DNA from: Orbicella franksi
Lineage: Eukaryota
Direction of reading: 5' to 3'
NCBI GenBank assembly: GCA_964199315.1
Contig: OZ116705.1
Coordinates: 9,300,001 to 9,364,000, forward strand
DNA length: 64,000 bases
In this document: piece after piece, positions 11,201 through 16,800 of the stretch
How positions within the stretch are numbered: the stretch's first letter is position 1
Layout of the letters: each line of letters begins with the position of its first letter
Notes under the pieces: generated by a model
What the model saw: only the letters and a program-made list of their open reading frames with translations
What the model was told of the DNA's origin: nothing
Databases searched by the model: none
Made by a program: the position numbers and the translations under genes

Positions 11201-12485
11201 ACCACTAAGGGTTAATGAAAATTCCATGATCTGTAAGAAGAGGAGAAGATGCAGCTCTGATAAGGTTTCGGCTGACTAGTTGTTAGTATATTACTAGATT
11301 CTGTTTTTATCCATTTGTTAAACCATAAGACATCCACAAGACACCAATATATAATGTGAAGACTGTACCTGAACCCAGCAGTGGAAAATTTGCTGATTAA
11401 TAATTATTATTTATTTATAGTTATTTTTTTATAAGGGGGGGGGGGGTTACAGTCCCTTCCCCTAATTCCCAGGTTCTGCCATTTCTAAATATTATTTTAA
11501 GGGGGGGGGGGTTGGCTACAGTCCCTCCCCATAAGCCCCTGCCAGGCTCTGTCGTCCCCGAAACCTCGCAAATGTTGCGGTAGTGTATCATGTAATTCTT
11601 TTTGTTGTCATTGCAGCAGCTGTTATCGTTTTGGGGCTTGGGGGCATTGTTTCTGTTTTTTGTTTTATTGTCCTCTCAAAGGGTTTCAAGGCATTCATGT
11701 GAGATCTTACGAGAGCTGCAACAAGACCCAAATGTTGGGGGATGCGAGGGATCAAACACCGAAATTAAAAAAAAAAACCTTTCAAATATGGTTATAATCT
11801 TCAGTGAAGCAAACCTTGTCTTCTGCAATTGTTTTTATTAATTATTAAAGATTATTTCCGTCAAGAACAAATTACGTGCACTAAATCACGACATCAAAGC
11901 CCGCGTTAGTTTTATAAATAAAACACGTGTGACTCCAACGTCACATTTACGTCCAGAAATCCATGTGAAAATTGTTTGAGCCAGGCCAAACTGTAATATG
12001 ATTTCCACTTCCAAAAAAAAAAACAAATCTAAATTTGAGTTTACAGTTAAACGCATTTCTGCTTAAACAGTTTTGAGCTAGCTTAAACGTACAGAACGTA
12101 CGAGGTCAATTTAGCAGCCTGATAGCAAAAAGCTAGCTTCCCTTGTATGCGTGAACACTTTTAATTTTTGAAGCAGAGAACGACTGGAAAACTTCAAAGC
12201 ATATTGTAATTTGTAGTGCATAACGATATAACAAATCAGGATTTCGCCAAAGTTAACAGGTGAGCTGGAATAATGGTTTTTACCCATTCATTTATTAAAA
12301 CTTACTTGAGCAATCCCGGCTCCCATAAGTCCACTGCCAATGACCGTGACATTTTTTATGGCATTGTGACTAGAGGATGAACTGAAAAAAGATGAAACCA
12401 CAGCCAAGTTCTTTCCCAATGATGAGTGCCTCAGAAACTGGGCAGATGGTAATTTCGAGGCAGTGCAACGAAAGAGTGAGGCCAT
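2249..12485 (-). CDS. HADH: Mitochondrial short/medium-chain L-3-hydroxyacyl-CoA dehydrogenase (partial; 3' exons lie left of the window)
   Basis: Exons 12485-12306, 10626-10498, 6306-6149, 4325-4199, 3662-3573, 2845-2773, 2296-2249, all GT-AG with matching phases. Translation gives a mitochondrial-type presequence, Rossmann motif [35 protein letters not shown], catalytic [29 protein letters not shown] and [10 protein letters not shown]. The GYPMGPF exon was not found in 1-2248. Confidence 0.97.
3803..3999. mobile_element. ~200-bp MITE with GGGGCCCGTTTCT...AGAAGCAGGCCCC TIRs (Harbinger-like)
   Basis: Terminal inverted repeats visible in the sequence. Confidence 0.75.
4559..4739. mobile_element. 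MITE family B (CAGGGGTTTCA...TGAAACCCCTG), 6-bp TSD
   Basis: Flanked by CATTAA on both sides. Other copies at 15409-15588 and 34241-34422. Confidence 0.85.
4994..5292. mobile_element. Two tandem family A MITE copies
   Basis: CAG[4994-5144]CAG[5148-5292]CTG; the two copies are in opposite orientation. Confidence 0.85.
8723..9494. mobile_element. 772-bp fold-back non-autonomous element, TTAA TSD, AG...CT termini (Kolobok-like)
   Basis: TTAA at 8719-8722 and 9495-9498; inverted arms of roughly 280 bp (AGTGCCTATGAAGTAAAAAATAATTGCTGC... and its reverse complement). Confidence 0.88.
9580..10009. mobile_element. hAT-like MITE CAGAGCTCTCAAG...CTTGGGAGCTCTG, 6-bp TSD
   Basis: CATAAC at 9574-9579 and 10010-10015. 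Confidence 0.8.
10770..11112. repeat. Interspersed repeat rich in ATCGA/TCGAT units
   Basis: Degenerate TTGATCGA repeats in both orientations, ending GCCTTTAGTACACATG; class uncertain. Confidence 0.55.
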
Positions 12486-12627
12486 ATTTGAGAAAAGATG
12501 CTAAAAGTCACGAAAAGTTCGAGTGTGACCGGGAAATGGGCTAAACACGTGGGACTGGGAACTAAAAGGTCAACGTCCATTCCCGGAGCGGGGGTATCCC
12601 GGGTAGTGGTGGCGGGGGAGGGTGGAC

Positions 12628-12932
12628 CCCGGGAGGGACTCCCATATGGAGTGGACGGGGATGCTCGCGGAAATGTTGAATTTAACCCCTAAAAGAGACC
12701 AATCTGGGCGTGGCCGAAGCTTATGCAGACCCCTAAAAGAGACCAGTTTATAAAACAGACAAATAAAAAGTACAGTGACTTCTTCGCGTGCAACCCTTAA
12801 CGAGACCTTGACGGCTAAAAATAATGACATTTTGCCCAGAACACCCTAAGCGAGACCAAAATCCGAAATTTACACCCCTAAGCGAGACGACGCGCATCCC
12901 CGTCCATTCCATATGGGAGTCCCCCACCGGGG
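12628..12932. mobile_element. GC-rich MITE in the HADH-ACSL intergenic region
   Basis: TIRs GGGACTCCCATATGGA.TGGACGGGGATGC / GCATCCCCGTCCATTCCATATGGGAGTCCC; direct repeat GGGTGGAC at 12620-12627 and 12933-12940; internal CCCCTAA(A/G)..GAGAC repeats. Confidence 0.85.
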
Positions 12933-13629: not shown

Positions 13630-13680
13630 TATAAAAGCCCATTCTCCGCGAGTAACCGAAGGGACATACACTGCATTATA
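13630..13680 (+). promoter_or_regulatory. Putative ACSL core promoter (TATAAAAG) and short non-coding first exon
   Basis: TATAAAAG at 13630-13637, strong donor ATA/GTAAGT at 13681, and acceptor TTTCACAG ending at 13870, 27 nt before the ATG at 13898. Confidence 0.6.
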
Positions 13681-13897
13681 GTAAGTATCTACTACATTGT
13701 TAAGAGTGCGATATTCTTTGTGAAAATGAGTTAAGCTTAACTTCCATGGTTATCACACGGTTTTGTTGCTTGAATTCACAGTTTTAGCTTCACGGATTCT
13801 TGAGTTATGCGTGAAAGACCCATTTTGTCATGCTTGGTTTAAAATTGTCATTTTCTGATACGTTTCACAGGCAATCAAAGCATCATTTGAAAAAGCC

Positions 13898-16800
13898 ATG
13901 GCGGATAGTGTTGCTGATTCCGCTCTGAAATATCTCGGAGACCCTGCCATGGCTGCAGGGCTTGGAGCAGTAGCCTTGGCGTCGATGTACTACCTTGCGT
14001 CACGTCCGACGCCTCAGCCTTGTCCCGTTGATCCTCAGCAACACTCTTTTGAGTTACAGGTAACTATTCTTACCACAAGACCCACGACCATTATTCTTCT
14101 TCGCGTGTAATTTTCTCTCGTTTTATAACGAAACTATTTTAAACGTTCTTTATTCCTGTGGTATCTAGATAAGCTTACAAAGATCTTGTCTGTATCCTAG
14201 CTTTTTCCACAAGACCCTCCCCCAATATTACTTAATCCAGCTTAATCTTTTTACAAACGAAATATAAGATCTGCAATTCTCCATTTAACATGCAACTGGT
14301 TGGAATGAGGTAAGTTGTACTCATGGGCCCTGTAATTCTGGTTTATCCACATGGCCCACTCCTCCCCCAAGGAACTGAACTTTTCAATAAGATGTGCCCA
14401 AATAGGGTAAAATTACTAGTAAGCCCAGGATTTGCCATGGTGTGAAAGTGTGGTTTCAGTTTATTTTTTGGTGCAAAATTAAATAGATTTGTTGGCCTTG
14501 ATTTAGCAGCAGCAAAGTATAAAATTATCCTTGACATACAGCTGTTTTGAGAAAGGCTGTCACATGAAAGGGTCTAGCTTATGCGACACGTCCGAATGGT
14601 AGTCCGAGTTTTCATTGGAACTTTGTATATCCGTGTAGAGGAAATCCACAAATTTGTATTTTGGTAGGTGAAGTTTTGGCAAGGATACATAAGATTTTCC
14701 ACTTATAACACGGTCTGTAGCTTTTTGTTCACTGTTACATGACTTTTAGTGGAAAATTCTCCTAAAATTCAGTGTGATGAAAAGAACCTTGGTTCCACAA
14801 GTCAGAAGAAAAAGAAACCATACGAAATGATGCAATTTACCTTGTCATTATATCTGATTAAGTATTCAGCATGTGTAGCAGCTATCTACTTCTGCCCATA
14901 CTAACTTTCAGGGTTGCCTCATGCACTTTTATGCTTTAAACCCAACAATCCTTCTCAAAACAGCTGCATTCATACACTGCAGTACAACTCAGGCTCATTA
15001 CTTTTATTAGTTACGTACATTTTGGGTTGCTTTTCTTATAAATCTTTGTCAAGAGTGAAATGTGAAAATGTGTTTTTTATTCATGAGAATATTTACAGTC
15101 ATGTAAATGATGATAATTTTGCTCAAGTTTTGTTACGGCTTTGATTGATAACAGGACCTCACATGGTCGAATAATTATTTTTGTTGCAATACTTAGGACT
15201 GGCAAATCCCCATTTTGTTAATCATGTGACTATATGATTATGAACAAAACTGGACTCCCCTATACTGTAGGTAGTATCATTAGTTATTATTTGGCTTCAT
15301 GTAGCTCCATGAGCGGGCAAGATGAACCAAATCTTGCACTGTGATAGGCTACCTGAGTAAGCAAGAAGGTGCTATCTTGCTCACTTGGGGTTAGCCACTG
15401 AAAAAAAACAGGGTTTTTATTAATGTTTTCAGCAGGAGAGTAATATTGGTTTTCACAGGCAGACAAAACTATTTGATCTGAACTTCTTTGTAAAAAAAAC
15501 TGTCCACTAGATTGTCAAACCAGGTTGGCAAAATCTTCCTCACAGGCGGTCAATTTGCCCAGTGCCCAGCTCTTAATTAAACCACCTGAGAAAACAGTGT
15601 TCTTTTTCCATATAATAAATCCTTTATTGACCAAGCTTGTTTGGTCAAGACAGCTGGATATTGGCCTCATATTGTTTTTTGTGTTTTGGCCAATATCTTA
15701 ACAATAACCATAATTATTTTCAATAACCCATAATTATTTGCAAGTTAATGAAAACTTTTTTAAATTTATTTTAAAAAAATACAGGATGGTGATTATGCCA
15801 GAATGAATTCCCTAACTAGAGAACTTGTGGAAAAATTATTTGATGACGTGAACACAAGCCATGAAGCTTTCCTTCGAGGCGTGAGAATATCAGGTCAGAA
15901 ATTTTAATCTCAACAAGTTGTAATTTTAAATCGCAGTCTAATTTCTCCTTATGTTATTAATGCATTGAAAAGTAGATGGCTGATGAGAATAAAGAAAATC
16001 ATCAGCTAAAAGATGATTGTCTTGATGTACTACCAAATTCTCACAACTAGCATGGAAAGAAATGTATAGCAATCAGTATGAAGAATTAAAATATTGATCT
16101 AGAGGCTGCAAAGAACTTCAGAATTTGCCGGTACATATACTGGTAAGTAAGTAAAAGCTTTATTAATGTGTCAATGTATTTAGTTTTCGCAACTAATTGG
16201 AGACCTAACTGGCGGACCTAGATGCACACTGATGGGTGAACCATTTGACTTTTTTGGGAGGGGTGGGTGATTTTGAAAACAAATTCACACACTTTGATTG
16301 AGCTTAAAAAATTCATGTTGTATGGAGAAAAAAAAAATTCATCATGCACACATCTGGGGGAAAAAATTTCCTTGTGAGCATGAAAGGGTTGAAAAAAGCA
16401 ATTGTGCTTGTACCAAATCACCCACCCAGTCCCTCCATCAAAAGTCAAATGATCCACCCCTAAAGTATCTCACTCGAGAACACAACCAATGACCCCTGCC
16501 AGGGCTCAAATCTGGACTGCTTCAATTTAATTATCAGTGCACAAACCCTCTGGCCCCAGTTGTTCAAAGGCTGGATAACGCTATCCACTGGATAACTCGC
16601 TATCCAGTAGATAAGTGTTAACAAAACAAACCATGCTATCCACTGGATATGATTTATCCAGTGGATAACGTTATCCACCTTTCGAACAACCCAGGCCAGG
16701 CCACCATGCCTTCAACCAAAGACATCAAACTATATGTTTTTGAACTTTCTATTTTAAACTATATGTACTTTTGATGTGAATTTATAACTATTGTCTCAGG

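What the first reader, a model, noticed from the sequence alone, without database searches (positions are those of the whole stretch)
12306..14059. Head-to-head fatty-acid catabolism pair: HADH and ACSL share an upstream region
Seen: the HADH ATG (12485, minus) and ACSL ATG (13898, plus) diverge with 1412 bp between them, and the predicted transcription starts are only about 1.1 kb apart. Established: ACSL activates long-chain fatty acids to acyl-CoA and HADH catalyses the third step of beta-oxidation, so these non-homologous enzymes act in one pathway; in human the two genes are far apart. Inference: a co-regulated bidirectional lipid-catabolism unit, of interest in an animal that may receive lipid from algal symbionts. 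I do not know of it having been described.
Basis: partly seen in the sequence, partly recalled or inferred. Interest (0 to 1): 0.72.

Follow-up and report, generated by a model that had tools for sequence, protein, structure and literature searches.

The report
Coral HADH–ACSL divergent gene pair
Two fat-burning enzyme genes (HADH and a long-chain acyl-CoA synthetase) really do sit back-to-back in this coral and in six other stony-coral contigs, but each has its own small promoter, the spacer between them varies freely and accepts a transposon, and the pairing was not found outside corals, so it is a modest lineage-specific case of a familiar arrangement.

Summary
HADH exon 1 (12306-12485, minus) and the first coding exon of an acyl-CoA synthetase (ATG 13898, to 14059, plus) diverge across 1412 bp. 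Spliced poly(A) reads support every boundary and place the two starts about 1.05-1.1 kb apart.

- **For:** the head-to-head order is kept in six other coral contigs. Each gene has a short conserved proximal promoter block carrying a DR1/HNF4-like nuclear-receptor motif at a fixed distance from its ATG, so a common regulator is plausible.
- **Against a single shared promoter:** the sequence between the two blocks is not conserved. The ATG-to-ATG gap ranges from 859 to 5101 bp among corals, and here it holds a young 305-bp MITE with an 8-bp target-site duplication.
- **Against wide conservation:** five more distant anonymous animal contigs and a scorpion have no ACSL next to HADH. In human the genes lie at 4q22-q26 and 4q35.
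- **On co-expression:** the two informative runs show HADH changing 2.8-fold while ACSL stays flat. Published Aiptasia data show ACSL up in symbiosis but HADH (M/SCHAD) not.

Verdict: a real but ordinary divergent pair, a new member of a known kind. The scan's only other note on this stretch repeats this finding; a sister note (s1-240473) flags the DR1 motifs.

The parts
1..12485 (-). HADH gene (mitochondrial medium/short-chain 3-hydroxyacyl-CoA dehydrogenase). Seven coding exons lie in the window: about 12306-12485, 10497-10626, 6151-6303, 4196-4324, 3573-3659, 2771-2845 and 2247-2297. The last two exons lie outside the window at C8:9292727-9292801 and 9292190-9292312.
   Evidence: tblastn with alligator HADH P0075; Pfam 3HCDH_N exon hits; intron 1 joint in RNA
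12306..12485 (-). HADH coding exon 1: presequence plus the Rossmann motif [13 protein letters not shown]
12549..12590 (.). HADH-proximal conserved promoter block. It holds a DR1-like element AGGTCAACGTCCA at 12567-12579, 82-94 bp upstream of the HADH ATG. The block is kept at the same offset in all 7 coral sequences, with variant half-sites (for example TGGTCAATGGTCA in L014).
   Evidence: alignment A4; motif positions
12628..12932 (.). Young non-autonomous transposon (MITE), 305 bp. It has imperfect terminal inverted repeats, five internal ACCCCTAAAAGAGACCA-like units, and an 8-bp target-site duplication GGGTGGAC at 12620-12627 and 12933-12940.
   Evidence: repeats; 1091 first-look candidates in the genome, copies 96-98% identical; empty site in L011; sequence read
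13285..13297 (-). Central DR1/HNF4-like motif AAGTCAAAGGTCT. A similar motif occurs mid-spacer in most of the coral contigs, but its position and strand differ between lineages.
13557..13680 (+). ACSL core promoter and non-coding exon 1. It contains the invariant DR1/HNF4-like TGAYCAAAGGTCG (13560-13572), the block CAAAAnCTCGTGATT (about 13594-13610), a TATA-like TATAAAAG (13630-13637) and the donor GTAAGTATCT starting at 13681. This is the only non-coding stretch that blastn finds conserved against the Tara coral scaffolds.
   Evidence: E 1e-7; alignment A3; RNA joint 13680>13871
13681..13870 (+). ACSL 5'-UTR intron (GT..AG)
   Evidence: 8 spliced reads
13871..14059 (+). ACSL exon 2, with the ATG at 13898 and an N-terminal membrane-anchor-like segment
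13606..29431 (+). ACSL gene as a whole. About 20 coding exons are recognisable in stop-to-stop frames. The last exon ends ...[10 protein letters not shown].
   Evidence: exon-level AMP-binding and acyl-CoA ligase matches

Best explanation
This is a genuine, expressed, divergently transcribed HADH/ACSL pair that has been kept side by side throughout a clade of stony corals. It works as two adjacent unidirectional promoters, not as one bidirectional promoter. Each gene has its own short conserved proximal block: about 40 bp for HADH and about 125 bp for ACSL, the latter with a TATA-like box and a 5'-UTR intron. Each block carries a DR1-type nuclear-receptor site at a fixed distance from the ATG. 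A freely evolving spacer separates the two blocks. Any coupling of the two genes is therefore most likely in trans, through a common DR1-binding receptor such as the cnidarian HNF4, RXR or COUP-TF orthologues, and possibly helped by lying in one open chromatin domain.

Shown here: the gene models, the splicing, the start zones, the conservation of order and orientation, the two footprints, the variable spacer and the MITE insertion.

Inferred only: receptor binding, co-regulation and any selective reason for the adjacency.
For: - Gene models and RNA joints.
- The same head-to-head order is found in L003, L007, L011, L012, L013 and L014. In the HADH tree, the coral sequences that could be included (L014 was left out as too short, L012 was not entered) form a 100/99-supported clade with the window.
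- Phylogenetic footprints are limited to the two proximal blocks. TGAnCAAAGGTCG is invariant in all 7 sequences, 299-346 bp before the ACSL ATG. The HADH block with its DR1 sits 73-93 bp before the HADH ATG.
- Between the window and the Tara scaffolds, blastn finds nothing conserved except 13557-13729.
- ATG-to-ATG gaps are 859, 889, 897, 1091, 1412, 3994 and 5101 bp.
- A MITE with a target-site duplication lies between the promoters here, and L011 has the empty site.
- Cnidarians and corals have an HNF4 orthologue (PMC2749838).
- DR1 sites bound by HNF4alpha/PPARalpha control a beta-oxidation gene in mouse (PMC3061263, abstract only).
Against: - No binding or reporter data exist.
- The DR1 pattern I counted was defined after seeing two of the three sites. 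Window-wide it is no more frequent than in shuffled sequence (11 matches against 12.45 expected).
- The start sites are bracketed, not mapped, because the libraries are unstranded.
- The reach of a receptor site does not depend on a compact spacer, so shared use of the central or proximal DR1 sites by both genes is not excluded.
- Local synteny is conserved between these corals in general: even an ORF nested in HADH intron 7 is kept. Conservation of the pair alone therefore does not prove constraint.
- The taxa behind the contigs are anonymous.
Confidence: 0.55

Rival explanations
1. Neutral neighbours. The adjacency is a historical accident that persists only because gene order changes slowly among stony corals. 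The two genes are regulated independently, and the DR1-like motifs are ordinary promoter elements of lipid genes or chance matches.
For: - The spacer length is unconstrained (0.86-5.1 kb) and accepts transposons.
- Other local features are conserved as well, such as the nested ORF in HADH intron 7.
- The pairing is absent from all six outgroup loci and from human (PMC4466690).
- HADH changes 2.8-fold between X23 and X24 while ACSL stays flat.
- In Aiptasia, ACSL5 rises in symbiosis and M/SCHAD does not.
- The motif is not enriched window-wide.
Against: - The 13-nt ACSL motif is invariant in 7 lineages whose flanks have diverged beyond blastn recognition.
- A DR1 at a fixed offset is found in the HADH promoter as well.
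- Both genes belong to one pathway whose genes are DR1-regulated in bilaterians.
Confidence: 0.3
2. One reading: a true bidirectional lipid-catabolism unit in which one shared regulatory region drives both genes together. Selection keeps the pair intact, perhaps in connection with lipid supplied by algal symbionts.
For: - Divergent orientation is kept in all 7 coral sequences.
- The ancestral start-to-start distance was probably under 1 kb. The window without the MITE, and L003, L007, L011 and L014, have ATG gaps of 859-1104 bp, of which about 300 bp is ACSL 5' UTR plus intron.
- There are three DR1-like sites in 1.4 kb.
- There is precedent in HADHA-HADHB (PMC3514665).
Against: - No conserved sequence lies between the two proximal blocks.
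- Two lineages have pushed the promoters 4-5 kb apart without losing either first exon.
- A MITE sits between the promoters here.
- No co-expression is seen in the little data available.
- Nothing ties the pair to symbiosis, and the symbiotic state of the species behind the contigs is unknown.
Confidence: 0.15

Closest known systems
HADHA-HADHB head-to-head pair (the two subunits of the mitochondrial trifunctional protein), listed among the strongly co-expressed conserved 5'-5' pairs by Irimia et al. 2012 (PMC3514665)
   Same: Two beta-oxidation genes are transcribed divergently from a short intergenic region. Orientation is conserved among related species.
   Different: HADHA and HADHB encode subunits of one complex. 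They are conserved as a pair across distant animals and are tightly co-expressed (r = 0.79 in that paper). HADH and ACSL are not subunits of a complex, the pairing was found only in a coral clade, the spacer is variable, and co-expression is unshown.
Operationally defined bidirectional promoters: head-to-head genes with starts less than 1 kb apart (for example HSPD1-HSPE1; PMC3514665, PMC7817982)
   Same: Divergent orientation. The probable ancestral start separation is under 1 kb.
   Different: In this genome the starts are about 1.05-1.1 kb apart because of a MITE. There are two discrete conserved cores rather than one shared core, and the ACSL side has a TATA-like box. I did not test for a CpG island; G+C over this kilobase is only slightly above the window average (0.42-0.45 against about 0.39).
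DR1 (PPRE/HNF4 site) control of fatty-acid oxidation genes in bilaterians (for example the thiolase B gene under PPARalpha and HNF4alpha, PMC3061263)
   Same: Motifs of the type AGGTCA-n1-AGGTCA / CAAAGGTCA lie close to the starts of lipid-catabolic genes.
   Different: No binding evidence exists in any cnidarian. As far as I know cnidarians lack PPAR, so HNF4, RXR or COUP-TF-type receptors would have to act. The motif match is loose by the generic DR1 consensus: 2-3 mismatches.

Membership tests
Bidirectional promoter pair (head-to-head, starts <1 kb apart) | Divergent (5'-5') orientation with no gene in between | tested here: met
   No tRNA or Rfam match in 12300-14100. The only insert is a MITE.
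Bidirectional promoter pair (head-to-head, starts <1 kb apart) | Transcription starts less than 1 kb apart | tested here: not met
   The HADH start is about 12490-12530 and the ACSL start 13547-13606, giving about 1.02-1.12 kb. It would be about 0.75 kb without the 313 bp added by the MITE and its duplication. It is probably about 0.55 kb in L003, L007 and L014, though that is inferred from ATG gaps, not measured.
Bidirectional promoter pair (head-to-head, starts <1 kb apart) | Correlated expression of the two genes | tested here: inconclusive
   Only two informative runs. Summed depth over the bin holding HADH exon 1 is about 23 and 63; over the bin holding ACSL exon 2 it is about 6.8 and 5.8. 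Runs X21 and X22 barely cover either gene.
Conserved ancient microsyntenic pair in the sense of Irimia et al. 2012 | Adjacency kept across distant animal phyla | tested here: not met
   Present in 7 coral sequences. Absent within 7.8-9.5 kb upstream of HADH in L015-L018, within 2.4 kb in L019, and in the scorpion locus L020, whose neighbours are an LCCL/fn3 gene and a PH-domain gene. Human HADH is at 4q22-q26 and ACSL1 at 4q35. Named sea anemone, octocoral and hydrozoan genomes could not be reached.
HADH (SCHAD, 3-hydroxyacyl-CoA dehydrogenase) | 3HCDH_N domain with a Rossmann motif, and closest similarity to animal HADH | tested here: met
   PF02737 exon hits. 63% identity over 273 residues to alligator HADH. 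The last two exons align to the C-terminal part of alligator HADH (residues 258-319, GYPMGP...GEGFYKY), though no Pfam scan of them was run. The other 3HCDH_N loci in the genome lie on other contigs.
ACSL (long-chain acyl-CoA synthetase, ACSL1/5/6 type) | Adenylate-forming (AMP-binding) fold | tested here: met
   Exon-level matches to PF00501, to acyl-CoA ligase NCBIfams, and to PDB luciferases, 4CL and fatty-acyl-CoA synthetases. Atlas clusters are named AMP-binding.
ACSL (long-chain acyl-CoA synthetase, ACSL1/5/6 type) | Subfamily-specific sequence (orthology to ACSL1/5/6 rather than to other acyl-CoA synthetases) | tested here: inconclusive
   No full-length ACSL reference could be obtained. 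The support is the Atlas cluster name 'Long-chain fatty acid-CoA ligase' for the last exon and motifs I recall from ACSL1 (memory, not a test).
MITE (non-autonomous DNA transposon) | Terminal inverted repeats, target-site duplication, many near-identical copies, and an empty site in a relative | tested here: met
   The superfamily (an 8-bp duplication suggests hAT-like) was not tested further.
DR1 / HNF4-type nuclear-receptor response element | Two RGKTCA-like half-sites spaced by one base, bound by NR2-family receptors | not testable with these tools
   Sequence resemblance and positional conservation only. Binding needs an experiment.

The most novel reading that the evidence does not exclude
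The HADH-ACSL intergenic region is a coral-wide regulatory module controlled by an HNF4-type receptor. Fatty-acid-sensing NR2 receptors would bind the three DR1 sites and drive both genes together. If so, the HNF4-to-beta-oxidation logic known from flies and mammals would predate the cnidarian-bilaterian split, and in stony corals it would have locked fatty-acid activation to the short-chain dehydrogenase step.
Probability: 0.2. Interest if true: 0.55.

Novelty: new member of a known kind. Interest (0 to 1): 0.3.

Why it matters
If the pair is co-regulated, it gives coral physiologists a compact natural test bed of about 1 kb. It has three candidate receptor sites and natural spacer variants from 0.86 to 5.1 kb, which could be used to study how lipid catabolism is switched during feeding, starvation and bleaching. 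It would also bear on whether HNF4-type control of fat burning predates bilaterians. If the genes are merely neighbours, the locus is just one more divergent pair, of which animal genomes have many. For annotation, the work fixes both gene models. It shows that ACSL has a non-coding first exon, that HADH runs beyond the window, and that a MITE, not regulatory sequence, accounts for a fifth of the 'shared upstream region'.

Tried and rejected
1. A whole-library phmmer search with HADH exon 3 returned mostly exon-sized fragments. The only clean full-length hit was alligator HADH.
2. The search for homologous proteins with alligator HADH listed vertebrates almost exclusively, so no named cnidarian HADH could be obtained. 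The same tool with exon 3 gave 3 hits. With exon 1 it gave 11 hits, and those opened the coral contigs.
3. Alignment A1, alligator HADH plus the separate coral exons, was misaligned by MAFFT and was not used.
4. Pfam on single ACSL exons was weak: one hit below the cut-off. The genome-wide PF00501 scan scored only the 13 best candidates and did not list this gene.
5. RNA depth over 12592-12973 was considered as a possible upstream HADH start and rejected. Those reads carry fixed differences, an extra T after 12667 and a joint at 12779/12780, exactly where other copies of the MITE hold about 72 more bases.
6. Runs X21 and X22 laid almost nothing on either gene and were not used.
7. No tRNA or Rfam family lies in the spacer.
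8. A literature search for a described HADH-ACSL pair found none. The supplement of Irimia et al. 2012 is not held.
9. Enrichment of the degenerate motif CAAMGKYCD was rejected as evidence. The window-wide count equals the shuffle expectation, and the pattern was derived from two of the three sites.

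
Full report
**What is there**

The window is part of contig 8 of a 497-Mb coral-type genome. RNA and DNA runs that hold the stretch are labelled coral metagenome or carry coded coral organism names.

On the minus strand, the ATG at 12485 opens a 60-codon exon ending [15 protein letters not shown] at 12306. Further HADH exons follow downstream. They were found with alligator HADH (P0075) as probe at about 10498-10626, 6151-6297, 4196-4324, 3573-3665, 2771-2845 and 2247-2297. 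The last two exons lie outside the window, at C8:9292727-9292801 and 9292190-9292312. Pfam 3HCDH_N matches the exons. The stitched coral sequence is 63% identical to alligator HADH over 273 residues.

On the plus strand, the ATG at 13898 opens a 54-codon exon. About twenty further exons of an adenylate-forming acyl-CoA synthetase run to about 29431. Exon-level searches establish the AMP-binding / acyl-CoA ligase superfamily, and the last exon falls with a cluster named long-chain fatty acid-CoA ligase. I read the motifs [27 protein letters not shown] and the C-terminus as ACSL1/5/6-like. That reading is from memory, because no full-length ACSL reference could be obtained.

**RNA evidence (poly(A) raw reads, runs X23 and X24)**

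- HADH intron 1 is spliced 12306>10626 (25 and 87 reads).
- ACSL has a non-coding first exon spliced 13680>13871 (GT..AG, 7 + 1 reads).
- The coding exon is spliced to 15785. The joint was reported as 14054>15780, but TACAG occurs on both sides, so the canonical cut at 14059/15785 fits.
- One read has 75 nt upstream of 13680, and there is no depth over 13356-13546. The ACSL start therefore lies between 13547 and 13606.
- HADH depth declines just past the ATG.
- The starts are about 1.05-1.1 kb apart and the ATGs are 1412 bp apart.

**A transposon in the 'shared' region**

Positions 12628-12932 are a 305-bp MITE. It has inverted ends and five ACCCCTAAAAGAGACCA-like units. It is flanked by the 8-bp duplication GGGTGGAC at 12620-12627 and 12933-12940, which I read.

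The family has over a thousand first-look candidates in the genome, with copies 96-98% identical. Most copies hold about 72 more bases at the point corresponding to 12779/12780.

The RNA reads over the element show fixed differences, an extra T, and a 'between not known' joint at exactly 12779/12780. They therefore come from other copies and say nothing about an upstream HADH start.

The closest relative's contig, L011, has the empty site ...GGGGGAGGGCGGACATGCGCC.... The insertion is therefore recent, and the ancestral ATG gap was about 1.1 kb.

**Conservation**

Exon-sized ORFs from coral metagenome assemblies gave access to orthologous loci. In all six loci long enough to judge, ACSL exon 1 lies upstream of HADH exon 1 on the opposite strand.

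| Contig | HADH exon 1 identity to the window | ATG-to-ATG gap |
|---|---|---|
| L011 | 93% | 1091 bp |
| L012 | 88% | 5101 bp |
| L013 | 77% | 3994 bp |
| L014 | 73% | 897 bp |
| L003 (Tara Pacific scaffold) | 78% | 859 bp |
| L007 (Tara Pacific scaffold) | 80% | 889 bp |

In a maximum-likelihood tree of the stitched HADH sequences, the window groups with L011, L013, L003 and L007 at 100/99 support. L014 was left out as too short, and L012 was not entered.

Five more distant anonymous contigs carry an intact HADH. They are L015, which is weakly sister to the corals at 69% identity, and L016-L019. None has an ACSL-like exon at E<=1e-4 in the 7.8-9.5 kb upstream (2.4 kb for L019), or downstream. 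A scorpion HADH is flanked by an LCCL/fn3 gene and a PH-domain gene.

In human, HADH maps to 4q22-q26 and ACSL1 to 4q35 (PMC4466690). The arrangement is thus neither species-specific nor ancient. On present sampling it is a stony-coral feature. Named sea anemone, octocoral and hydrozoan genomes could not be reached with the caps available.

**Where the constraint lies**

Against the Tara scaffolds, blastn finds only one conserved non-coding stretch, 13557-13729, which is the ACSL core promoter and 5' exon.

A seven-way alignment of the ACSL side shows:
- an invariant TGAnCAAAGGTCG at window 13560-13572, 299-346 bp before the ATG in every lineage;
- a CAAAAnCTCGTGATT block;
- a TATA-like box at 13630-13637;
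- the 5'-UTR donor and acceptor.

On the HADH side, one block is conserved, AATGGACGTTGACCTT..GTTCCCAGTCC in HADH orientation (window 12549-12590). On the plus strand it contains AGGTCA-A-CGTCCA at 12567-12579. The other lineages have variant but still DR1-shaped versions, for example TGGTCA-A-TGGTCA in L014.

A third site, AAGTCAAAGGTCT (13285-13297, minus strand), has counterparts mid-spacer in most lineages, at differing positions and strands.

Everything else between the two blocks is unalignable at this distance, and the spacer varies six-fold in length.

**How it most likely works**

The locus holds two separate core promoters, each with its own DR1-type nuclear-receptor site. They lie back-to-back in a spacer that is free to expand.

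Coupling, if any, would come from a common DR1-binding receptor. Cnidarians and corals have HNF4 and other NR2 receptors (PMC2749838). In mouse, HNF4alpha and PPARalpha act through such sites on a beta-oxidation gene (PMC3061263, abstract only).

This part is inference. The motif definition was made after seeing the sites, and window-wide the pattern is as frequent as in shuffled sequence (11 against 12.45). The argument rests on positional conservation, not on counts.

**Evidence on co-expression is thin and not favourable**

Between X23 and X24, summed depth over the bin holding HADH exon 1 goes from about 23 to about 63. Over the bin holding ACSL exon 2 it stays at about 6-7.

In the anemone Aiptasia, long-chain steps including ACSL5 rise in the symbiotic state. 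The medium/short-chain enzymes, including M/SCHAD (= HADH), do not (PMC3931562).

HADH acts on medium and short chains. It is therefore several steps and one membrane away from ACSL, although both belong to fatty-acid catabolism.

**Conservation of the pair is not in itself evidence of selection**

A long coiled-coil ORF is nested in HADH intron 7 on the same strand (L002:6268-9363). It has a 50%-identical counterpart in the same relative place in L007. Local gene order is evidently stable among these corals in general.

**Comparison with the known**

The nearest precedent is HADHA-HADHB. Irimia et al. 2012 (PMC3514665) list it among conserved, strongly co-expressed 5'-5' pairs, alongside classic bidirectional promoters such as HSPD1-HSPE1.

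The present pair shares the orientation and the pathway. It differs in four ways:
- it is lineage-restricted;
- it has two separate footprints;
- its spacing is variable;
- it has no demonstrated co-expression.

By the operational definition of starts less than 1 kb apart, it fails narrowly in this genome because of the MITE, and probably passes in several relatives.

I found no description of an HADH-ACSL pair.

**Verdict**

- Novelty: a new member of a known kind.
- Interest is low to moderate. The most valuable by-product is the pair of deeply conserved DR1 footprints, which belongs with sister note s1-240473.

Noticed in passing
window 12628-12932 (target-site duplication at 12620-12627 and 12933-12940): High-copy, young MITE family with an 8-bp duplication and internal ACCCCTAAAAGAGACCA-like repeats. 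This copy lacks about 72 bp that most copies have. Poly(A) RNA contains reads from other copies.
   Followed up: yes
L002:6268-9363 (-) = C8:9296268-9299363, just outside the window: A 1031-codon open frame, with coiled-coil-like weak Pfam hits only, is nested in the 9.4-kb HADH intron 7 on the same strand. A 653-aa counterpart at about 50% identity lies after HADH exon 7 in the Tara coral scaffold L007 (14741-16702).
   Followed up: partly
As far as I recall the human orthologues HADH, ACSL1, NAF1 and RPL34 are all on chromosome 4q. HADH at 4q22-q26 and ACSL1 at 4q35 were checked in PMC4466690. This looks like a compact remnant of an ancestral linkage group.
   Followed up: partly
window 56071-62638 (+): An OATP/SLCO organic-anion transporter gene. 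Two large exons match PF03137 at E 4e-60 and 4e-53, and a Kazal-like Cys motif lies near 59700.
   Followed up: partly
window 15457-15668 and 10682-10872: Intronic repeats in ACSL intron 2 and HADH intron 1. RNA depth there is much higher than in the flanks, and many reads run on into unrelated sequence on both sides. These are transcripts of dispersed repeat copies, not of these genes.
   Followed up: no
L017:19089-19607: In one unidentified animal contig, a second partial HADH copy (exons 3-4 only, with an in-frame stop) lies 7 kb downstream of the intact gene. It looks like a tandem pseudogene fragment.
   Followed up: no
L015:11475-11621: In the contig weakly sister to the corals, HADH exons 6 and 7 are fused, so one intron is absent, and the whole gene spans only about 3 kb.
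   Followed up: no
window 12507-12514 and 13601-13608: Both 5' regions contain a conserved TCGTGA(C/T)T core: TTCGTGACTTTT near the HADH ATG and CTCGTGATTT in ACSL exon 1. It could be a start-associated motif common to the two promoters.
   Followed up: no
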